A DNA stretch of 64,000 bases from Octopus bimaculoides. Taxonomy: Eukaryota. Within the stretch, counting starts at the first letter, position 1. Every line of letters begins with the position of its first letter. The notes beneath the pieces were generated by a model that searched no databases, was not told where the DNA came from, and saw nothing but the letters and a program-made list of their open reading frames with translations. The position numbers and the translations under genes were made by a program. Shown here in pieces: positions 15,919 to 57,982 of this stretch. The stretch is taken from contig NC_068981.1 of the NCBI RefSeq assembly GCF_001194135.2, forward strand, positions 197,375,253 to 197,439,252, written 5' to 3'.

Positions 15919-16550
15919 CAGGGTACAGTGAATAAACTGTATTCTAAATTACGCAAAAATGAAAATAACACTGACATCTCATTTCAACAGACATATTTAC
16001 CAAAATTACACACAAATATCTTGAAATACTAAAGAGTAAATTTATTCAATAAAATCGCCATTGGCTTCAACCATGGCCTCCAGATGACTTCAGAATCTCC
16101 TGCAACTCTTCTGGATGGTCTCCTTGTTTAAGTTGGTGAATGTTGCCATAATCCTTGCCTTCAGTTCATCTTTGGTTTTACAAGGAGTTCTGTTGGTCTC
16201 TCGCTCAACTGCACCCCACAAAAAATAATCAAGGGGGTTCCAGTCTGAAGAGTTAGGTGGCCAGATGTTAGGGATGATGTGGTTGCAGAAATTGTCTGAC
16301 AGCCAAGACTGGGTTCTCCTGATTGTGCGGCATGGTGCAGAGTCCTGTTGCCAGACATAATTTACACCCAAACACTCTGAAATGTTCGCAGTGGAGCTTC
16401 CAGCACGAATGCCAAGCAGTACAGCTTGTCGTTTCCAAATTTCTGGCAGAGTGAATTGCGTCATGGTGCTGTTTTTCTCACAGACAGTGCTCACAAAGTC
16501 AAAAACAAACAACGCATATGTACAAAATTAAAAATATAAAATGGCAAGAT
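15919..16550 (-). mobile_element. Internally deleted Tc1/mariner (DD37D/maT-like) relic
   Basis: ORF 16090-16512 encodes YVWQQDSAPCR...IWPPNSSDWNPLDYFLWGAVE...KDELKARI. The end reads TA|CAGGGT. Confidence 0.85.
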
Positions 16551-20465: not shown

Positions 20466-22690
20466 AAACATCATCATCGTTTAACGTCTGTTTTCCATGC
20501 TGGCATGGGTTGGACGGTTTGACAGGTCTGGAGAGCCAGGAGGCTGCACCAGACTCCAATCTGATTTGGTAAGGTTTCTACAGCTGGATGCCCTTCCTAA
20601 CGCCAACCACTTCGAGAGTGTAGTGGGTGCTTTTTACGTGCCACCGACACAGGACCCAGTCAGGCGGACCTGACATCGACCACGTTCAGATGGTGCTTTT
20701 TACGTGCAACCGGCACGGGAGCCAGTCAGGGGCCACCTGCCACAGCTACGGTATTGGTTTTACTTGACTCAACAGGTCTTCTCAAGCATATCATATCGCC
20801 CGACGCATCAGGGGTACTCTTAACTGGGCCGGATATGCATGGCTGCCATCTCACTTTAGTTGCCGGGTCTTTTCAATCACAGCGTATCTCCAAAGATCTC
20901 GGTATCCTGTCATTACCTCTGTGAGACCCAATGTTCGATGGTCATGCTTTACCACCTCATCCCATGTCTTCCTGGATATACCTCTTCCACAGGTTCCTTC
21001 TACAGTTAGGGAGTGACACTTCCTCACGCAGCTGTCCTCATCCATACGTAACACATGACCATACCAGCGCAGTCGTCTCTCTTGCACACTACATTTGATG
21101 CTTCTTATGCCCAACTTTTCTTTCATGGCGCTTCCTTTCTGACATGTATGCACACTAACATTACACATCCAGCCGATCATAATAGCTTCATTTCTTTCAA
21201 GCCTACGCATGTCCTCAGCAGTCATGCCTATGTTTCACTGCTGTATAGCATGGCAGTTCGCCCACATGCATCATACAGTCTACCTTTTCATCTTGGGCGA
21301 GAGGCCCTTACTTGCCAGCAGAGATAGGAGCTCCTTGAACTTTGCCCAGGCTATTCTTATTCTAGCCGCTACACTCAAAGAGCAACCACCTCCACTACAG
21401 ACTTGGTCACCTAGGTAGCGGAAGCTATTAACTACTTCTAGTTTTTCCCCCGGCATGTGATGGAATCTGTTTTCTGTACATCTTCAGTGTTTATTGCCCC
21501 TGTGCATTTGCCACACACAAAAAATATCTTCCCGGTTAGCCTTCCTTTGATATTGCTGCACCTTTTATGTGTCCATAACTTACAGCGGGTACATCGTATA
21601 GAGTCTTTACCCACGCCTTTTCTACAGATCGAGCAGGGCCATCTACCTGAAGGGGTTTGTGATTTGTCAGCCTTCCTACTTACTAAGACTTTGGTTTTTG
21701 CTAGGTTAACCCTAAGGCCCTTCGATTCTAGACCTTGCTTCCACACCCTAAACTTCGTCTTTAGTTCTGGAAGTGACTCAGCTATTAGAGCAAGGTCATC
21801 AGCATAGAGGAGCTCCCAAGAGCAGCCTGTCGTGAATTCCTCTGTTATTGCCTGGAGAACTATAATGAATAAGAGGGGGCTGAAGAATGATCCTTGGTGA
21901 ACCCCTTCTTCTACTCGGAATTCTTCACTATATCCGTTGCCAACGCTTACCTTATTGCCAGTGTCCCTGTGCAGGGCCTGTACAGCTCTTACCAGCCACG
22001 CATCTATCCCCAGTTTCCACATTGATCACCAGATAAGGGATTGAGGGACTCGGTCAAGAGCTTTCTCCAACAAATCAACAGAGGTTTATCTTTGGCTAGG
22101 TATTTCTCCTACAGTTGCCTTACCAGAAATATAGCATCAGTGGTGCTTCTGCCTCGCACAAAACCAAACTGCATCTCATTCAGTCTAACTCTCTCCCTAA
22201 TTACTTAGGCTATGATCCTCTCAGTTACTTTTATCACTTGATCCAATAATTTGATAGCCCTGTAGTCATTTCTATCTAAAGCGCCACCTTTAGCTTTGTA
22301 GCAGTTGACTATGGTGCTGCTACACCAGTCATTGGGTAGGACTCCTTCATGATCTACAATATGGGTGACAAGACCATAATCCACACCACCCGATATTTTA
22401 AGTATCTCGGCGGTGATTCCTGATGGGTCGGGGGCTTTTCCTGTCTTCATATCCTCAATTGCTTTATCTACCAAGGTACTGTCGATTCAGATAGCTGGTC
22501 CCTCAATCGGGTCAACCTTTGGCAGACTCTCCTCCTCCCATTCATTCTCTACATTCAGCAGTCTTTCATAATGACATCTCCAAACCTCTTTCTTTGCAGA
22601 ATCATTAAACGCAAGGGCACCATCATCCATGCGGACACATTTCTCTCTTATAACATCACGGTTTTCTCTCACACACTGTCTTGCAATCCG
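20466..22690 (-). mobile_element. 5'-truncated, degraded RTE-type LINE (RT, Cys-rich domain, 3' UTR, GAT-repeat tail)
   Basis: ORFs 22487-22672, 22205-22474, 21438-22022 (GVHQGS, LLYADDLAL, CSICRKGVG...CTRCKLWTHKRC) and 20851-21225 (RLRWYGHVLRM). Several stops and frameshifts. Confidence 0.92.
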
Positions 22691-23979
22691 AAAAACTTCA
22701 GTGTGTGGGTGGCGTTCTTTTACTCAGTGCCTGCCACCAAGCCTAGTATGCGTACCCAAATGGCACGTCTTATATAACTCTTTCATCTACTCTCTCTCCC
22801 GCTTTCTATATACTACGCAAAGTACGAATAGAGATATCAACCAACCAATTATTATATGGAGATATGGACCCAGTACTTGACTGATAATTCATTTTATCGA
22901 CCTCGGAAGAACGAAAATCAAAATTGATATCGGAGGGATTTGAACTTGGTACGTAAAGGGCCGTAACTAAATACCATAAGGCATTTTGTTTGATCCTCTA
23001 ATGATTCAGTTAATCTTTTGCCCTTCTAGTTTGTCATAATTACATCCGTTTAACTAATTAAATCAATACCATTTTCAAGTTGTTGCTTGTTTTTCCGGCA
23101 ACATATTCTTCAAAGTCACCTCTTTTAATTGGAAGCATCATCTTCGGTAACAGCACCATCACCACCTACAACAGCCGTTAGTCACCTACGGGCGGAGTCC
23201 GGCTCAAAGTCTCCGAACAAAATTATATCTACTCGCTCCACAGCAGCTAGAAATAAATGCTGGCTGATTTCGAGGTCTATATTCCGATAACCAGCGATTG
23301 TAATAGCCAAACCATTAGACTTGCTATTAGTATTTTCATCCGGTACTGATCTGTGGAAATTCCACCGCCCATTGTCAATCACAAATATCTCCCTACTTGG
23401 TAGTAAAATATCCTGTTATTTCCTTCTTAATACTTCGAGTAATTTCCAGGAAATTTTCTCTATTCTTTGCGGCTATATTTTCTCTTCTAGCCCCCCACTC
23501 TTTTCTTTTTATTCTAACTTGTACAAAATATTCTTGCCCATCACAATCGTTCGTATTTTCTTTTCTTTCTTGACAAATACTTCTCTTTCTTTCCCTGTTA
23601 TCTCCGGCTTCGTCATCATACAACACCATTTAGCTACAATTTATCCCTTTTCTCTTGAGTTCATTCCTGATTCTCACTTTATTCCTAATTCTTATTTCTT
23701 TCTTTGCCATATTTCTAGTCTTTTTTTCTATCTTCTCTGTTTTTCTCGATTTAATTTTCGTTGTCCTTTGTAAACCACCAAACTCTATTTCGGTAATAAA
23801 ACAATTTAAGAAGCATTTGACGTTATATAGTTGGTAACACCTGGATCCAAGATATTTCGTTATACATCTTTTATGAAGAAAGTTAGGAACGCAGTTAGTA
23901 ATATAAAGATAACAGAAGAGACAGGTGTTCGATTTTCACGAGCTGCTCTATGGCACGTGCATTAAATCGTCAGGTAAAT

Positions 23980-41947: not shown

Positions 41948-42418
41948 CAGGGTGTGTAAGATATTTGAGGACAGATTTATGTTTATAAAACAACAGATTT
42001 ATAATAACAGATAATAACTTTATTTATCAAAAAACGTTATGAGGATAAAAATAAACCTTCTTTTCTATAATGTTATTCAATAAAGCCACCTTCAGCTTCA
42101 ACAACTGCTTCTATACGAGATCTAAGTCATCTCCATGCTCGAATCAAGTGGTCCTGGTTCATTTTGGACATTACTCTGACTATGGCAGATTTCAAAGAAT
42201 CTATGGTGTTATGGGTGAGTTCATTGACCTCTCTCTCAACAACGCTCCACATGTAATAGTCCAATGGATTGAGATCTGGCGAATTAGGAGGCCAAATGTT
42301 AGGGGTTATGTGATCATGACAATTTCCAGCCATCCATTCCTGTGTTACTAGAGCCATGTGTGATAGTGCAGAGTCTTACTGAAACACATATGGCCTTTCA
42401 TTGCTTACACTGTCTATC
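41948..42418 (-). mobile_element. Tc1/mariner (DD37D/maT-like) relic running into a gap
   Basis: ORF 42127-42357 encodes IWPPNSPDLNPLDYYMWSVVEREVN. The end reads TA|CAGGGTG. Confidence 0.85.
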
Positions 42419-49323: not shown

Positions 49324-52300
49324 GACAGTATCAGTTATCAGAGACCGTTTTATTAAAAAATTTGACTGACAGAATTCTGTATAGTATCTGAGGTTGTTTT
49401 GTTTCGGAGCTCGATATTCCAGCTTATATAACATTCTGTCAAGCTTTCAGAACTTTCATTCAAACAATTTGACAGGAAATTTTTTCAAGCCTATTGTTTC
49501 TTCGGTTGCGCCAATCAGTCTGATTGGTCAAGCCTATGTTCACATAGGCGTGAAAGCCTTTTGTAATGACAAAGTAAATTTCTCGTAACTTGCCTTGCCT
49601 TTTATGGTAACTTTACCTTAAACTGAGGAATGTGAATGAGATCGTTGAAAAGTCAGCCGAAGCTTTGCTACAATAACATAATATTATCCTGTTTGTCTAC
49701 GATTGAATGCAGTTCAGGTGACTCCTTGTCCAAACGTGACAGATTGGACCATCAAATCAATAAAAGTTTTGAACAAAAAGGATCACACGCAGCTACGAGC
49801 TATGTGTTTGGATAAGCATTGTGTGACAATAATGAGGTCAATAAATAACAACGAACGTCTTCTTGATAACCGGACATGACAGAGGATTAACTGAGATGGT
49901 TTAACTGCTGCAACAACAACAACAACAACGACAACGACGGCGATAAATCTGAAGGATATTAAATGTTTAAAAACTACTAATAGATTTATTTCGTCTAAAA
50001 TAGGTGTGGCCAAAAGAAAAGTTTCGGTAAAGTTTTATATTAACACGCGCACGATTTTCACTACGTAAAAAAAAACAAAAAAAACTCGGACTTTTTGCGT
50101 GGNNNNNNNNNNNNNNNNNNNNNNNNNNNNNNNNNNNNNNNNNNNNNNNNNNNNNNNNNNNNNNNNNNNNNNNNNNNNNNNNNNNNNNNNNNNNNNNNNN
50201 NNNNNNNNNNNNNNNNNNNNNNNNNNNNNNNNNNNNNNNNNNNNNNNNNNNNNNNNNNNNNNNNNNNNNNNNNNNNNNNNNNNNNNNNNNNNNNNNNNNN
50301 NNNNNNNNNNNNNNNNNNNNNNNNNNNNNNNNNNNNNNNNNNNNNNNNNNNNNNNNNNNNNNNNNNNNNNNNNNNNNNNNNNNNNNNNNNNNNNNNNNNN
50401 NNNNNNNNNNNNNNNNNNNNNNNNNNNNNNNNNNNNNNNNNNNNNNNNNNNNNNNNNNNNNNNNNNNNNNNNNNNNNNNNNNNNNNNNNNNNNNNNNNNN
50501 NNNNNNNNNNNNNNNNNNNNNNNNNNNNNNNNNNNNNNNNNNNNNNNNNNNNNNNNNNNNNNNNNNNNNNNNNNNNNNNNNNNNNNNNNNNNNNNNNNNN
50601 NNNNNNNNNNNNNNNNNNNNNNNNNNNNNNNNNNNNNNNNNNNNNNNNNNNNNNNNNNNNNNNNNNNNNNNNNNNNNNNNNNNNNNNNNNNNNNNNNNNN
50701 NNNNNNNNNNNNNNNNNNNNNNNNNNNNNNNNNNNNNNNNNNNNNNNNNNNNNNNNNNNNNNNNNNNNNNNNNNNNNNNNNNNNNNNNNNNNNNNNNNNN
50801 NNNNNNNNNNNNNNNNNNNNNNNNNNNNNNNNNNNNNNNNNNNNNNNNNNNNNNNNNNNNNNNNNNNNNNNNNNNNNNNNNNNNNNNNNNNNNNNNNNNN
50901 NNNNNNNNNNNNNNNNNNNNNNNNNNNNNNNNNAATAAATACAAACACAGATACGCACAGCGTATATAATTGACTTGCTCCTTCCCTCAAAAACCAGGCC
51001 TTGTGCCTATAATAGAAAGGTTTATTAGCTACTGCCAATATGCTTCAGCCATTTTTTGACAAGGAAATAATAATTTTATCACCGCCAGAATCGTTTGTTT
51101 ACGTAGTCAGCACTTACTGTATTCGACTGAATGGACGTCAGTCATTGGTTGAAATTACAGAAATACGACAACTTTAACATGAAATAACTTGCGATGTACG
51201 TTTTTTTGTTAAGAAGACTAAGAGAAAAAGATGTGTTATATGACACATTCTACCAGTGTCCCAAGTTTCAAAGTGTTTCGTTAAGAAAATACTGGTGCCC
51301 CCGAGTGTCTTTCAAAAACATCTTAAATTTAATGATTATATCTTGTGTGTTTAGGAAAAAAACAAAACATTTTACAGAAATAAAATTCCCAGAATGTGAA
51401 TTGCATGGTTCGTCATTAAATATATGGCCCCTCGTCAATCACCATTTTCCAGAACCAATATAAGGGATTTGCAGCATATTAGGAGGTCAAGGTACTTGAT
51501 TCCACGCAAAAAAATCCGAGTTTTTTTTTTCTTCTTTGTGAAAATCGTGCGGGTGTTAATATAAAAATTTACCAAAGTTTCTGTCATGGCTGATATTTCT
51601 GCAATTTAAAATATATTTGATTTCCAATTCATTAACATTTTTGCTAATGAATAAATGGGATTTACAGTATAATTTAATGAATGACTAAAATTTTTATGTT
51701 AGATATAATAATAATGAAATTATTGTAAACAGTGCTCAGGTGCACTACAACAATCTCCGTCACTTTTCATCTACGATGAATACAGCACACACAGCCATAA
51801 TTAAAGCCCCGAATGGGGAACTGGAACCCTTAAAGCATAAAATATAGTCACAGAGGTCACGTTACAGAAATTCTTTAACAAAAGTCCCAAGGGAACTTAT
51901 TCCTGACAACCAACATTAATATGTAACGAGTTATGCCCCTTGCTCTGGCTTTATTCCTACCAAAAAGCAAGATTAATAAAACAAACCATTTACAAAAAAG
52001 TTGCTAAGATTTTCATTGTGATTTCCCGTCCGATATTCAAATAAGTTTGAGCTTCAAACTTCAAGTCATGAAGTATAACCATTGAAAGTTTCATATTTTT
52101 GTTTAAAGATTTTAATTTAATAATACCTAGCGTCTCTTCTGATGTCATTCCTCAACACACACGCTAATATCGAACAGTGTGAATGAAGGCTCAATACCGC
52201 GTTGGTGGATAAATATTCTTCGTTGTTAACAAAGCTACCAATAATGGTAGAGAGTAGTCTCTCAACAATATCAGCCCTGCCACATGGAAACATTGCTTCT

Positions 52301-52660: not shown

Positions 52661-53008
52661 GGGTTCAGTCCCACTGCGTGGCACTTTGNNNNNNNNNNNN
52701 NNNNNNNNNNNNNNNNNNNNNNNNNNNNNNNNNNNNNNNNNNNNNNNNNNNNNNNNNNNNNNNNNNNNNNNNNNNNNNNNNNNNNNNNNNNNNNNNATAT
52801 ATATGTTTGTGTGTCTGTGTTTGTCCCCCCACCATCGCTTGACAACCGATGGTGGTGTGTTTACGTCCCCGTAACTTAGCAGTTCGGCAAAAAGAGACCG
52901 ATAGAGTAAGTACTAGGCTTCCAAAGAGTAGTCCTGGGGTCGATTTTCTCGACTAAAGGCGGTGCTCCAGCATGGCCGCAGTCAAATGATTGAAACAAGT
53001 AAAAGAGT
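52661..53008 (+). mobile_element. SINE family B spanning a gap
   Basis: Head fragment plus 3' module. Further partial B copies at about 5973-6122, 20268-20466, 39270-39480, 40545-40678, 42826-42960, 53378-53600 and 63932-64000. Confidence 0.8.
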
Positions 53009-53814
53009 GTATGTTTTCATGTTTGTTTTCGTTCAGTTTCTTTGTATGTTTCCAATGTCATTTTTTTGTTCCCAACTTTGACCCTCCATAGATCCTAAAT
53101 TTTATCTTAGAATTTATGGGAGCAACTGTCTTTGAAAACTCATATTGTCATTGAATGTTTGACAGCCAACAACTGATGAAGGATCCTTTCTCTGTATTCA
53201 CTTGTCCTGTTTTCCATTTTTTTCTTGTTTATGTACTTCACTTGTTTTTCCCTCCTTTGTTTACGTATTTCATGTTATTTGCACCATTGGTGACGTCCTC
53301 TGCCTTCTATATCTATATACCTATATCATGTTGTGTCTGTCTATCTGTTTCTCTCTCTATATATGTGTGTGTGTGTGCTTTACTTGTTTCACTCATTTGA
53401 CTGCAGCCATACTGGCGCACCACCTTGAAGGAGTTGTTTAGTTGCACAAATTGTCCCCAGGATAGTTTTTCAAACCTATGACTTATTCTATTGTTCTCTT
53501 TTTGCCAAGCCACTAAGTTATGAGGACTTAAAAGCACCAGTACAGGTTAAGAGGTTGTGGGAGTGGGTGGTGGAAAAAAAAAAACAGACACAAAAACACA
53601 CACACATAGATACATATGAGGTGGTAGCAAAACATTCCCAGCACTTGTTATGTTAAATAAAAAAAAATAACTTATTTACCTAAGTTTTAACATCATCTCC
53701 TTTGAAATAGTCACCTTACACAGCAATACCCCGGTCCCAGCATTCGTGTCACTTTTAGAATCCAGCCTGGAATTCATTTTCCATAAAGAAGTTGAGGACC
53801 TTCTGTGATTCATT

Positions 53815-54289
53815 TATAGTGATGTCGATCATGTGACATCCTATAATTTAATAAGCATGAGAGAAAGAGGGGGTCACCATCTTATACGTAATGTCAAGAA
53901 ATATGAATTTATGAGACGTTTGTAATAAGTCATAACATATTTATTACTGGAGGTAATGTGTTAACATGTAAGGTTAATTGAAGGAAAAGCTTGTAACATC
54001 ACATGAACATACTCTCTTTGCAACCACATGTCTCCAAGTAAAATGAGGTGAACATATGCTGGTGCGGGTGTGTATGTGAGTGGTCCGACTCAACGCATGT
54101 CGAAGAATCAACAGGCAATGAATGGCGCAAATTTAGAAATGTGTTCCTTTATATAAGGGGTGAACCAGAAGTCCCTGACTTCCACGTCAACTGGAAACTT
54201 CTAGAATGCTTGAGAATTTTCTAGAAGGTTGAGGTAGATTAATCTCATTAAATCCTTTTCGTTTTGCTTTCCTGCCAGGGTTCACTACA
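53815..54289 (-). mobile_element. Solo LTR (probably Gypsy-like) inserted in a mariner relic
   Basis: On the minus strand it starts TGTAGTGA and ends TCACTATA (8-bp terminal inverted repeat, TG...CA with one transition). Flanks CATT (53811-53814) and CGCT (54290-54293) fit a decayed 4-bp TSD. It interrupts mariner sequence that is contiguous in the copy near 36170-36200. Internal order is HSE, TATA, Inr-like, AATAAA. Confidence 0.7.
54193..54231. promoter_or_regulatory. Heat-shock element array (nGAAn inverted repeats in 5-bp register)
   Basis: GAA 54194, TTC 54199, GAA 54204, degenerate unit 54209, GAA 54214, TTC 54219, GAA 54224, TTG 54229. TATATAAA follows on the minus strand at 54155-54148. 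Confidence 0.7.
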
Positions 54290-54886
54290 CGCTCTTAATC
54301 TCAACAATGGTGTTAAAACGGCAACGTTTGAGATGCATTTTCATCTTGAGGAAGAGATGGAAGTCCACAGGTTCTAAATCTGGTGAATGGGGTGGGTGCA
54401 GAAGTGATATCATATTGATTTTGGTGAGAAACACACGAGTGAGAAGAGCTCAGTGACAGGGTGCCTTGTTGTCATGAAGAATCCAATTCTTTGAACTCCA
54501 CAGATTGCCAAATGTCTTCCCTCAAATGCTTCAAAATATCACAGAAGAACTCTTGATTGATGGAAATGGTACATGCTTTAAACTGGTTGCTGTTAGCAAG
54601 GACATCCAGTGGCAGACATTGGAACATAATACTGTTATCCAACTCATGAAATTCTGTCAAACCCTTTTGCCCATGGCAGCATGGACACCAGATGTCAAAT
54701 TATGAGAGGAGGAAAGGAGGAGGAGGAGGATATGCCATGAGGGAAAGACAATTTTAGTTTCTAATATTTTGATTATACATGCATCACAACTTTAGATTAC
54801 TTAAGGCCTGTGATCTAAAGAACACATAAAGAATCGTCTTGCCAAAATTAGCAAAACTGAAAGCATTGCATTATTTTTGCTAAATT

Positions 54887-55348
54887 AAGGCGGGGGAGGG
54901 GGAGCTGGCAGAAACGGTAGCACGCCGGCTGAAATGCTTAGTGGTATTTTATCAGTCACTATGTTCTGAGCTCAAATTCTGCAGAGGTCGACTTTGCCTT
55001 TCATCCTTTCGGGGTCGATAAATTAAGTACCAGTTATGTACTGGGGTCGATCTAATCAACTGGTCCCCTCCCCCAAAATTTTGAGCCTTGTGCCTAGAAT
55101 AGAGAAAAAAAAAAGAAAAAAAAGATTATTTTTGCTAAATTAATAGAGCAGGGTCATTGGAATGCCAGATATAAAAAAGTCTTGTGGTATTCCTTTCATC
55201 TCTTTACATTCAGAGTTCAAATCCTGCTGAGGTCAACTTTGCCTTTCATCCTTTTGGGGTCTCTAAAATGAAGTACCAGCTAAACACTGGGGTCAATTAA
55301 TTGACAAACTCGTAGCTCTTAAAATTACTGGTCATGTGCCAAAATTAG
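54887..55348 (+). mobile_element. Two tandem SINE family A copies (54887-55105 and degraded 55142-55348)
   Basis: Two consecutive matches to family A. Confidence 0.78.
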
Positions 55349-57311: not shown

Positions 57312-57904
57312 GTCAGTTATTCACAAGTCCGAAGAAAAGCACATTGTGTATGTATGTAATTGTGTATCACTCGCTTTCTCTCTTTCTCCTTATCTCTCTC
57401 TCTCTGACATCACGCGATACTTTCATTTCTTTTTGCCGACGCTATTCTACAAGTAAACCGTAAGCTGTAATTGTTTTAACCCCCACCTCACCCAGGACAC
57501 TCCCGTTCAATCAGATCTATTGTTAAAAACACCAAACTGTGAATAAGACCCGCAACCCAGTGATAGCCATTTTAATTTCGTCGTTAACTGTAAAACCGTG
57601 CGCCTCGACAAGAAATCGATTATCAGATCGAAAGTGGAAAGATGCAATCTATCAGATAACCAAAAGATGTAAAGTCAGAACTGAGATTTTTAAAACGAAT
57701 TTATTCAGAACACATGAAAATTTCTGTTCACCGTAACTAGATAATCGGGGTATCTTTCGGTAATCAGGGTATCATTTCAAACGGAATGGTATCGTTATTA
57801 TTTCGTCGTTGCAAATACAAATATCACAACAAATTCCATTTTTAAAGGGAAAACATAACAGCAACTGTAATAAGTAGTTAAAAAGCGAGGCGCAAAATCG
57901 TAAG

Positions 57905-57976
57905 GGTTCTATGGTGTAATGGTTAGCACTCTGGACTCTGAATCCAGCGATCCGAGTTCGAGTCTCGGTAGAACCT
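57905..57976 (+). tRNA. tRNA-Gln-CTG: tRNA-Gln (anticodon CTG), intact
   Basis: 72 nt GGTTCTATGGTGTAATGGTTAGCACTCTGGACTCTGAATCCAGCGATCCGAGTTCGAGTCTCGGTAGAACCT. Acceptor stem GGTTCTA/TAGAACC, anticodon stem CTGGA/TCCAG around CTG, T-arm CCGAG-TTCGAGT-CTCGG, intact A and B boxes. Confidence 0.96.
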
Positions 57977-57982
57977 GATACA

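What the first reader, a model, noticed from the sequence alone, without database searches (positions are those of the whole stretch)
53815..54289. Solo LTR carrying a complete heat-shock promoter (candidate heat-inducible retrotransposon)
Seen in sequence: a 475-bp insert splits a mariner relic, has TGTAGTGA...TCACTATA ends on the minus strand and a plausible decayed 4-bp TSD. It contains two perfect three-unit HSEs (GAAacTTCtaGAA and GAAttTTCtaGAA) in one continuous 5-bp register at 54194-54226. On the minus strand, TATATAAA starts about 38 nt past the array (54155-54148), an Inr-like CCATTC lies about 32 nt past the TATA start, and AATAAA is at 54945-style U3-R-U5 position 53945-53940. Established: HSF binds three or more alternating nGAAn units; HSE-TATA at this spacing is the hsp70-type layout; heat-activated LTR elements (ONSEN in Arabidopsis) and HSE-dispersing Helitrons (C. 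elegans) are known. Inference: this is a member of an HSF-responsive LTR family whose solo LTRs could scatter heat-shock promoters through a marine ectotherm genome. I do not recall this being described for cephalopods.
Basis: partly seen in the sequence, partly recalled or inferred. Interest (0 to 1): 0.85.

Follow-up and report, generated by a model that had tools for sequence, protein, structure and literature searches.

The report
Lone retrotransposon LTR with heat-shock promoter
A 475-base piece of mobile DNA sitting inside a dead mariner transposon looks like a leftover retrotransposon end (solo LTR) carrying a textbook heat-shock promoter, a trick already shown in plants and flatworms, so it is a reasonable lead for octopus but not a new kind of thing.

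Summary
A 475-bp insert (53815-54289) interrupts a mariner transposase relic. A second mariner copy in the window (about 35987-36469) lacks the insert, and the interrupted copy has exactly 4 extra bases at the junction. On the minus strand the insert starts TGTAGTGA and ends TCACTATA. It carries the only two perfect three-unit heat-shock elements in the 64 kb, 20 bp apart and in register, followed by TATATAAA, an Inr-like CCATTC and AATAAA in U3-R-U5 order. This is not chance: 0 of 2000 simulated windows gave a close HSE pair. The best reading is a solo LTR whose U3 is an HSF-type promoter. The family-level claims could not be tested. There is no second copy in the window, and no accessible collection holds cephalopod DNA. 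The 4-bp duplication is only 2/4 identical. Nothing shows HSF binding or heat induction. The novelty was overrated: HSE-bearing, heat-activated LTR retrotransposons are experimentally established in Arabidopsis (ONSEN) and, since 2025, in the marine flatworm Macrostomum lignano. At best this is a new member of a known kind. Interest is about 0.3.

The parts
53815..54289 (-). 475-bp insert: candidate solo LTR. In LTR coordinates on the minus strand, U3 is about 1-166, R about 167-370 and U5 about 371-475.
   Evidence: It interrupts a mariner relic and is absent from the paralogous mariner copy. There is no other copy in the window.
54282..54289 (-). 5' terminus TGTAGTGA (a TG... start)
   Evidence: Read directly. 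It forms a 7/8 inverted repeat with the other end. The chance of this is 0.1-1%.
53815..53822 (-). 3' terminus TCACTATA. TCACTACA is expected, so the canonical CA reads TA.
   Evidence: Read directly.
54214..54226 (.). Distal perfect trimeric HSE: GAATTTTCTAGAA on the + strand, TTCTAGAAAATTC on the minus strand
54194..54206 (.). Proximal perfect trimeric HSE: GAAACTTCTAGAA on the + strand, TTCTAGAAGTTTC on the minus strand. It is 20 bp from the distal HSE and in the same register.
54182..54189 (-). TGACGTGG, a CRE/UPRE-like octamer between the HSE array and the TATA box. Its meaning is unproven.
   Evidence: The motif assignment comes from general knowledge and was not tested.
54148..54155 (-). 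TATA box TATATAAA, 38 nt downstream of the HSE array
54120..54125 (-). Inr-like CCATTC. The predicted +1 A is at 54123, 32 nt after the first T of the TATA box.
53940..53945 (-). AATAAA poly(A) signal, about 180 nt downstream of the predicted start. An ATTAAA also lies at 53852-53847.
   Evidence: Not significant on its own in A+T-rich DNA.
53811..53814 (+). CATT: 4 nt with no counterpart in the uninterrupted mariner copy. This is the putative decayed left copy of the target-site duplication.
54290..54293 (+). CGCT: putative right copy of the target site. The uninterrupted copy reads TGCT here.
53618..53814 (-). Mariner relic, 3' part: the end of the transposase ORF (SQKVLNFF...GDYFKGDDV) and a terminal inverted-repeat-like end
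54290..54700 (-). Mariner relic, upstream part of the transposase catalytic domain (...HPPHSPDLEPVDFHLF...RFNTIVEIKSE)
36182..36188 (+). Paralogous empty site (ATT|TGCT) in the second mariner copy (about 35987-36469). It has no insert and lacks the 4 extra nt.

Best explanation
The 475-bp insert is most likely a solo LTR.

How it arose (inferred):
- A complete LTR retrotransposon was integrated by its integrase, with a 4-bp staggered cut, into the 3' part of an already dead mariner transposase gene.
- Recombination between the two LTRs later removed the internal gag-pol region and left one LTR.

What it carries, read on the minus strand:
- U3 holds a compact stress-type promoter. A seven-unit nGAAn array has six perfect units. 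These form two trimer-binding heat-shock elements two helical turns apart.
- A TGACGTGG octamer follows, then TATATAAA, then an Inr-like start about 32 nt further on.
- R runs about 180-200 nt to AATAAA, and U5 fills the last roughly 100 nt.

How it would work (inferred):
- In the active element, heat or proteotoxic stress would trimerise HSF.
- HSF would bind the two HSEs cooperatively and fire transcription of the genomic RNA from the 5' LTR, as shown for ONSEN and for Macrostomum Mag/CsRN1 elements.
- As a solo LTR, the copy could still act as a heat-inducible promoter or enhancer firing towards lower coordinates, with starts near 54123 on the minus strand.

What is shown and what is inferred:
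- Shown here: the insertion, the termini, the motifs with their spacing, and their improbability by chance.
- Inferred: the LTR origin, that the HSEs are ancestral to the family, HSF binding, and heat induction.
- My rough sub-probabilities are solo LTR 0.7, HSEs a family feature that can bind HSF 0.6-0.7, and this copy still heat-inducible in vivo 0.3.
For: - The insert splits a mariner whose two halves align colinearly with Mos1 transposase and with a second mariner copy that lacks the insert.
- The interrupted copy has exactly 4 extra nt at the junction. The reading frame shifts by +1 there, as a 4-bp duplication predicts.
- The termini are TGTAGTGA...TCACTATA, a 7/8 inverted repeat starting with TG. 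The chance is 0.1-1%.
- There is no longer terminal inverted repeat (reading), which fits an LTR better than a MITE.
- The insert holds the only two perfect trimeric HSEs in the 64 kb, 20 bp apart. 0 of 2000 simulations gave such a pair.
- TATA and Inr sit at canonical distances, with a chance of 0.4%.
- All signals share one orientation, and the poly(A) signal lies downstream.
- The 475-bp length and the HSE-upstream-of-start layout match validated HSE-bearing LTRs, which carry one to four canonical HSEs per LTR upstream of the start site (PMC12801592).
- CpG observed/expected is 0.60 in the insert and 0.26 in the mariner flanks. This fits an insert younger than its host relic, though the counts are small.
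Against: - This is a single copy. No relative was found in the window, among 5.8 billion predicted proteins searched in six frames, in metagenome contigs beyond the HSE motif itself, or in GTDB genomes and IMG/VR. So there is no paired LTR, internal region, PBS/PPT or family consensus.
- The putative duplication is only 2/4 identical (CATT vs CGCT).
- The 3' terminal dinucleotide is TA, not CA.
- The A/B mariner alignment has other indels (37, 4 and 11 nt), so the 4-nt surplus is supportive, not proof.
- The decayed ends sit awkwardly with 18 of 18 intact HSE core positions.
- The two HSEs may be one duplicated unit.
- AATAAA is not significant on its own.
- There are no binding or expression data.
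Confidence: 0.5

Rival explanations
1. It is a solo LTR, but the HSEs are private to this copy. They arose by chance mutation plus a local 20-bp duplication, or they are inert in vivo. On this reading there is no HSF-responsive family and no heat induction.
For: - The two HSEs resemble each other at a 20-nt offset, so one chance motif plus a duplication could produce both.
- TTCTAGAA is a simple palindrome. More than 120 metagenome contigs carry the same double pattern. Some hold it as repeated matches at 10-bp spacing, and none is linked to an hsp70 motif.
- In Macrostomum, two Copia families with a canonical HSE were not heat-induced.
- No family data are available.
Against: - One perfect trimeric HSE in 475 bp is itself rare: about 0.7 per 60 kb.
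- Its position 38 nt upstream of a strong TATA with an Inr at the right distance has a chance of 0.4%.
- LTR U3 regions commonly duplicate their own enhancers, so a duplication does not argue against function.
Confidence: 0.2
2. It is not an LTR. It is a short non-autonomous cut-and-paste element, for example a Ginger-like element with TGT... termini and a 4-bp duplication, or another class of mobile DNA that happens to carry a promoter-like segment.
For: - The ends are inverted repeats and the junction surplus is 4 nt.
- From my own knowledge, Ginger transposons use a gypsy-like integrase and produce TGT termini and 4-bp duplications.
- No internal retrotransposon region can be shown.
Against: - The inverted repeat is only 8 nt, with no similarity beyond it (reading). 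That is far shorter than usual for TIR elements.
- The one-directional enhancer-TATA-Inr-poly(A) layout is what an LTR needs and what a MITE does not.
- Helitron ends (5' TC, 3' CTRR, insertion between A and T without duplication) are absent in either orientation.
Confidence: 0.12
3. It is a fragment of a host heat-shock gene promoter plus 5' UTR. The fragment was copied into the mariner as filler DNA at a repaired break, or transduced by another element.
For: The HSE-TATA-Inr layout is that of a cellular hsp promoter.
Against: - The inverted TG... termini sit exactly at the break, and the 4-nt surplus is not expected for filler DNA.
- No chaperone reading frame follows the predicted start in any frame.
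- The six-frame search found no protein relative.
Confidence: 0.05

Closest known systems
HSE-bearing Ty3/Mdg4 LTR retrotransposons of the flatworm Macrostomum lignano (Mlig-id115|Mag, Mlig-id36/55|CsRN1, Mlig-id38|Gmr1/Osvaldo; Ustyantsev et al. 2025, PMC12801592)
   Same: - The host is an animal, a spiralian from a marine intertidal habitat.
- Each LTR carries one to four canonical nGAAnnTTCnnGAAn motifs upstream of the start site. The insert here meets the same regular expression twice.
- Solo LTRs are known for these families too.
   Different: - Those families have several copies, full-length members, a phylogenetic placement, more than 250-fold heat induction, and reporters with mutated HSEs.
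- Here there is one decayed solo copy with no family, superfamily, expression or binding data.
- Sequence homology was not tested and is not expected, because acquisition of HSEs is convergent.
ONSEN (ATCOPIA78), the heat-activated Ty1/Copia retrotransposon of Arabidopsis (Cavrak et al. 2014, PMC3907296)
   Same: - HSEs in the LTR let the element exploit the host heat-shock factor.
- New insertions and solo LTRs can make neighbouring genes heat-responsive.
- From my own knowledge, the LTR is of similar size (about 440 bp).
   Different: - ONSEN is a plant Copia element bound by HsfA2 and subject to plant epigenetic control.
- Binding and transposition have been shown for ONSEN.
- Copia elements make 5-bp duplications, whereas the junction here suggests 4 bp.
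Helitron1_CE and related Helitrons that disperse HSEs in Caenorhabditis (Garrigues et al. 2019, PMC6927752)
   Same: Mobile DNA carries HSF-1-bound HSEs and spreads heat responsiveness to nearby genes.
   Different: - Helitrons are rolling-circle DNA transposons.
- Their ends and insertion signature are absent here.
Cellular hsp70-type promoters (Drosophila hsp70, vertebrate HSPA1A)
   Same: Arrays of alternating nGAAn units lie in register a few tens of nt upstream of a TATA box, with an Inr about 30 nt after the TATA.
   Different: - No chaperone gene follows.
- The unit is bounded by TE-type termini inside another transposon.

Membership tests
LTR of an LTR retrotransposon (solo LTR) | A discrete insertion that is absent from an uninterrupted copy of the target sequence | tested here: met
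   The second mariner copy reads straight through the site (ATT|TGCT at 36182-36188), while copy A carries 475 bp there. The flanks align colinearly with Mos1 transposase.
LTR of an LTR retrotransposon (solo LTR) | 5'-TG...CA-3' termini within a short inverted repeat | tested here: met
   The termini are TGTAGTGA...TCACTATA, 7/8 complementary. The 5' TG is present, and the 3' CA reads TA, one transition away. The chance is 0.1-1%.
LTR of an LTR retrotransposon (solo LTR) | Target-site duplication of 4-6 bp | tested here: inconclusive
   There are exactly 4 extra nt at the junction and a +1 frame shift. But CATT and CGCT are only 2/4 identical, and other small indels occur in the same alignment.
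LTR of an LTR retrotransposon (solo LTR) | U3-R-U5 organisation: promoter, start site and poly(A) signal in one orientation | tested here: met
   In LTR coordinates the HSEs start at 64 and 84, TATA is at 135, Inr at 165 and AATAAA at 345 of 475. This is at the motif level only, and R was not mapped.
LTR of an LTR retrotransposon (solo LTR) | Other copies occur as direct pairs flanking gag-pol, with a PBS and PPT | not testable with these tools
   No collection at hand holds cephalopod genomic DNA. The window has no second copy. External searches were empty. No octopus contigs could be fetched.
HSF-dependent heat-shock promoter | At least three contiguous alternating nGAAn units | tested here: met
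   There are two perfect three-unit HSEs, with 6 of 7 units perfect in one register. 0 of 2000 simulations gave a close pair.
HSF-dependent heat-shock promoter | HSEs upstream of a core promoter at a working distance | tested here: met
   There are 38 nt from the array to TATATAAA, and the Inr-like A lies 32 nt after the TATA start. The chance is 0.4%.
HSF-dependent heat-shock promoter | HSF binding and heat-induced transcription | not testable with these tools
   This needs EMSA, ChIP or CUT&Tag, heat-shock RNA-seq or CAGE, or a reporter assay.
Heat-activated HSE-bearing LTR retrotransposon family (ONSEN-like, Macrostomum Mag/CsRN1-like) | HSEs present in the family consensus LTR, not only in one copy | not testable with these tools
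   Only one copy is available.
Heat-activated HSE-bearing LTR retrotransposon family (ONSEN-like, Macrostomum Mag/CsRN1-like) | Sequence homology to a described HSE-bearing family | not tested
   Reference LTR sequences were not at hand. The literature describes independent, convergent acquisitions, so homology is not expected.
Helitron (HSE-dispersing type) | 5' TC and 3' CTRR ends, insertion between A and T without a duplication | tested here: not met
   Neither orientation has these ends, and the junction has a 4-nt surplus.
TIR DNA transposon or MITE (including Ginger-like) | Terminal inverted repeats clearly longer than about 10 bp | tested here: not met
   Complementarity stops after 8 nt (reading). 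The repeat finder reports no longer terminal inverted pair.

The most novel reading that the evidence does not exclude
The insert is one relic of an abundant octopod LTR family that independently acquired a double HSE. Its solo LTRs have spread HSF-dependent promoters or enhancers across the genome and rewired part of the heat-shock regulon of a marine ectotherm. The perfect preservation of the HSEs in an otherwise decayed copy would then reflect selection on co-opted copies.
Probability: 0.1. Interest if true: 0.6.

Novelty: new member of a known kind. Interest (0 to 1): 0.3.

Why it matters
- If the family exists and responds to heat, it would be a third independent case of an LTR retrotransposon borrowing the host heat-shock factor, after Brassicaceae ONSEN and Macrostomum Ty3/Mdg4 families. 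It would be the first in molluscs or cephalopods.
- That would support the view that this strategy recurs across eukaryotes.
- It would also give a concrete set of candidate temperature-responsive regulatory elements in an animal whose thermal biology is of ecological interest.
- As it stands, it is one decayed copy in repeat-rich, apparently gene-poor DNA. Its practical value is as a search seed.

Tried and rejected
Searches for other copies:
- blastn (word size 7) and nhmmer of the insert against the window found only the insert itself.
- I searched the six-frame translation of the insert as one 971-aa query against 5.8 billion proteins, hoping for spurious ORFs called on other copies. There were no hits.
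- A metagenome scan with the double-HSE pattern returned more than 120 contigs. All matched only insert positions about 365-435, which is the motif itself. None carried hsp70 or hsp90 motifs, and only 16 of 120 had a TATA nearby. They are uninformative as comparators.
- Exact 23- and 28-mers from the insert found nothing in GTDB genomes or IMG/VR.

Attempts to reach octopus genomic contigs:
- An exact look-up of a window ORF and of the nearest named protein P0028 found nothing on record.
- The mariner relic translation found no database relatives through the word index.

Other checks:
- Pfam did not recognise the mariner relic. The PDB search did.
- Tandem Repeats Finder found nothing in the insert.
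- Rfam found no RNA family in or near the insert.
- The bacterial promoter/terminator scan is irrelevant here.

Readings considered and rejected:
- Helitron: the ends are wrong.
- SINE or LINE: no tail, and the ends are inverted repeats.
- hsp gene fragment: no chaperone ORF follows.

Full report
**1. The observation**

I read 53300-54800 on the + strand and printed the insert on the minus strand.

- The 475-bp segment 53815-54289 begins TGTAGTGA and ends TCACTATA on the minus strand.
- GAAACTTCTAGAA lies at 54194-54206 and GAATTTTCTAGAA at 54214-54226. Their starts are exactly 20 bp apart. With the imperfect unit between them, they form a seven-unit nGAAn array with six perfect units.
- On the minus strand, TATATAAA is at 54155-54148, with 38 nt between the array and the box.
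- CCATTC is at 54125-54120. Its A lies 32 nt after the first T of the TATA box.
- AATAAA is at 53945-53940.

**2. Is it more than chance?**

- The two HSEs are the only perfect three-unit HSEs in the whole window. Shuffles expect 0.56-0.80.
- In 2000 first-order Markov simulations of the window, the mean was 0.71 sites and none had two sites within 40 bp.
- Given an array, a TATAWAW box 15-70 nt downstream has a probability of 2.6%. With an Inr-like site 28-34 nt further on, the probability is 0.4%.
- The AATAAA is not significant on its own in DNA that is 62% A+T.
- The two HSEs resemble each other at a 20-nt offset (85% over 13 nt), and the array is also nearly palindromic. They may descend from one duplicated unit, which is common in LTR enhancers, so they should not be counted as two independent events.

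**3. What the insert sits in**

- With the insert removed, the flanks translate on the minus strand into ...HPPHSPDLEPVDFHLF...RFNTIVEIKSE | SQKVLNFF...GDYFKGDDV, with a +1 frame shift exactly at the junction.
- Pfam missed this relic.
- The joined translation aligns without a gap across the junction to the C-terminal catalytic domain of Mos1 transposase (E about 4e-11) and of SETMAR/Hsmar1. The 'mariner relic' is therefore confirmed.
- A second copy of the same mariner family lies at about 35987-36469 (77-82% identity in blastn).
- That copy reads through the site without an insert. It has ...CTTCTGGGATT|TGCTTTAGATC..., where the interrupted copy has ...CTTCTGTGATT-CATT-[475 bp]-CGCTCTTAATC....
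- The interrupted copy therefore has exactly four extra bases at the junction, as a 4-bp target-site duplication predicts. This agrees with the +1 frame shift.
- The two putative duplicates, CATT and CGCT, now agree at only two of four positions.
- The same pairwise alignment contains other indels (37, 4 and 11 nt). I rate the duplication as supported in length but unproven.

**4. What kind of insert it is**

- The boundaries are fixed independently by the mariner break. At these boundaries the ends form a 7/8 inverted repeat beginning TG. The chance is 1%, or 0.1% if TG is required.
- Complementarity stops after 8 nt (no longer terminal pair). This is the pattern of LTR ends (TGT...ACA), not of TIR transposons.
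- The 3' end reads TA where CA is expected, one transition away.
- Helitron ends are absent in both orientations.
- There is no A-tail or long variable duplication as for LINE- or SINE-type insertions.
- Enhancer (HSEs), TATA, Inr and poly(A) signal are all on the minus strand in U3-R-U5 order. In LTR coordinates they start at 64 and 84, 135, 165 and 345 of 475.
- No chaperone or other reading frame follows the predicted start.
- CpG observed/expected is 0.60 in the insert, 0.58 in the window and 0.26 in the mariner flanks. This fits an insert younger than its host relic, though the counts are small.
- Together these make a solo LTR the best reading. I put it at about 0.7.

**5. The family question, which could not be answered**

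- blastn and nhmmer against the window return only the insert itself.
- A six-frame pseudo-protein of the insert found nothing among 5.8 billion predicted proteins.
They match only the motif (insert positions about 365-435) and nothing else of the insert. They carry no hsp70 or hsp90 motifs either, so they are useless as comparators.
- Exact 23- and 28-mers are absent from GTDB genomes and IMG/VR.
- The window is a draft eukaryotic assembly with many N gaps. It is full of SINE-like repeats, Tc1/mariner relics and a LINE with RVT_1 and PHD domains.
- The closest named relative of that LINE ORF is an Octopus bimaculoides reverse transcriptase, UniRef A0A0L8HFH9, at 78% identity. An octopod origin is plausible but not proven.
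- I could not fetch any octopus genomic contig, and the mariner relic query found nothing.
- Paired LTRs, an internal region, PBS/PPT, the consensus and conservation of the HSE block all remain untested.

**6. An internal tension**

- If the ends are read as CGCT|TG decayed to CATT|TA, three transitions have accumulated within six bases at one junction.
- Yet all 18 core positions of the two HSEs are intact.
- There are several possible explanations. The copy may be younger than the ends suggest, with the junction changes being one local event or the duplication misread. The HSEs may have been preserved by selection after insertion. Or it may be luck with small numbers.
- One copy cannot distinguish these.

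**7. How it most likely works**

Shown:
- a discrete insertion with LTR-type ends;
- a canonical HSE-TATA-Inr promoter.

Inferred:
- An LTR retrotransposon integrated into the dead mariner and later collapsed to a solo LTR by recombination between its two LTRs.
- In the active element, stress-activated HSF trimers bound the two in-phase HSEs and drove genomic RNA synthesis from the 5' LTR.
- The solo copy may still fire towards lower coordinates from about 54123, ending at its own poly(A) signal or reading into the mariner tail and the SINE-like repeats beyond.
- A TGACGTGG octamer (54189-54182, minus strand) between the HSEs and the TATA box resembles CRE/UPRE sites. I only note it.

**8. Comparison with what is known**

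- The mechanism is established. ONSEN in Arabidopsis has HSEs in its LTR and is heat-activated through HSF (PMC3907296; summarised).
- Helitron1_CE disperses HSF-1-bound HSEs in Caenorhabditis (PMC6927752).
- Drosophila TEs are enriched for HSF sites (PMC6649756).
- The decisive precedent is Ustyantsev et al. 2025 (PMC12801592). They show that Ty3/Mdg4 families of the marine flatworm Macrostomum lignano independently acquired one to four canonical HSEs per LTR.
- Four of those families are induced more than 250-fold at 37 degrees C, and mutating the HSEs abolishes induction of an LTR reporter. Six of 137 families carried such motifs.
- The authors predict more cases across the tree of life.
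- The insert here meets their HSE definition twice and has the same layout.
- I found no report for cephalopods or molluscs in the searchable library.
- The finding works like these elements. Membership in any described family was not and could not be tested, and homology is not expected because acquisition is convergent.

**9. Verdict**

- The solo-LTR and heat-shock-promoter anatomy is supported at the sequence level.
- The claim of a heat-responsive family is untested.
- The novelty is at most a new member of a known kind.
- Confidence in the full best explanation is 0.5, and interest is 0.3.
- The most novel reading still open is an abundant family that has rewired the octopus heat-shock regulon, with selection keeping the HSEs. 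I give it about 0.1 probability. A single BLAST against an octopus assembly would largely settle it.

Noticed in passing
window 57904-57977 (+): A tRNA-Gln (anticodon CTG) is called by both Rfam (67.7 bits) and ARAGORN. It is the only RNA-family match in the window. It could be a real tRNA gene or the head of a tRNA-derived SINE.
   Followed up: partly
window 54182-54189 (minus strand TGACGTGG): A CRE/UPRE-like octamer, which also contains the ACGTG core, sits between the proximal HSE and the TATA box of the insert. It may be a second stress-type site. Its significance was not assessed.
   Followed up: no
window 53811-53816: If the target site was CGCT and the LTR end was TG, three transitions (G>A, C>T, G>A) cluster within six bases at the left junction, while all 18 core bases of the HSEs are intact. 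The decay is uneven and I cannot explain it from one copy.
   Followed up: partly
window about 35987-36469: This is a second relic of the same mariner family, 72% identical overall to the interrupted copy. It carries a 37-bp and an 11-bp segment that the other copy lacks. I used it as the empty-site reference.
   Followed up: yes
window 20854-22723 (-): A LINE relic has an intact 194-aa ORF with RVT_1 and PHD-finger domains (21438-22022) and neighbouring ORF fragments. Full-length relatives carry an exo-endo-phosphatase nuclease domain. The closest named protein is an Octopus bimaculoides reverse transcriptase at 78% identity.
   Followed up: partly
window 52844-53003 and 53379-53548: Two arms of an inverted repeat (74-90% complementary) are probably two SINE-like copies in opposite orientation flanking microsatellite DNA. 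They lie just beyond the mariner end that the LTR promoter points towards.
   Followed up: no
window 54964-55051 and 55209-55297: Two direct copies (81-86% identical, 245 bp apart) of a repeat containing ...CCTTTCATCCTTTCGGGGTCGAT... The same repeat recurs at least nine more times in the window (blastn hits at 423, 5647, 38353 and elsewhere). It is presumably the dominant SINE of this genome.
   Followed up: no
window 16093-16527 (-) and 42130-42375 (-): Two Tc1/mariner-type DDE transposase relics (...NIWPPNSPDLNPLDY...; DDE_3, E 3e-5 for the second) belong to a different family from the mariner that hosts the insert.
   Followed up: partly
loci L001-L120 (metagenome contigs): The pattern GAAnnTTCTAGAA-7nt-GAAnnTTCTAGAA occurs in more than 120 metagenome contigs. 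Some carry several matches at 10-bp spacing (for example L015). None has a recognisable hsp70 or hsp90 motif. They may be TTCTAGAA-based periodic repeats rather than heat-shock promoters.
   Followed up: partly
window, many places (for example 2190-2510, 6330-6900, 50100-50930): Long runs of N show that this is a gapped draft assembly. Sequence near the gaps, and any copy-number statement based on the window, should be treated with care.
   Followed up: no
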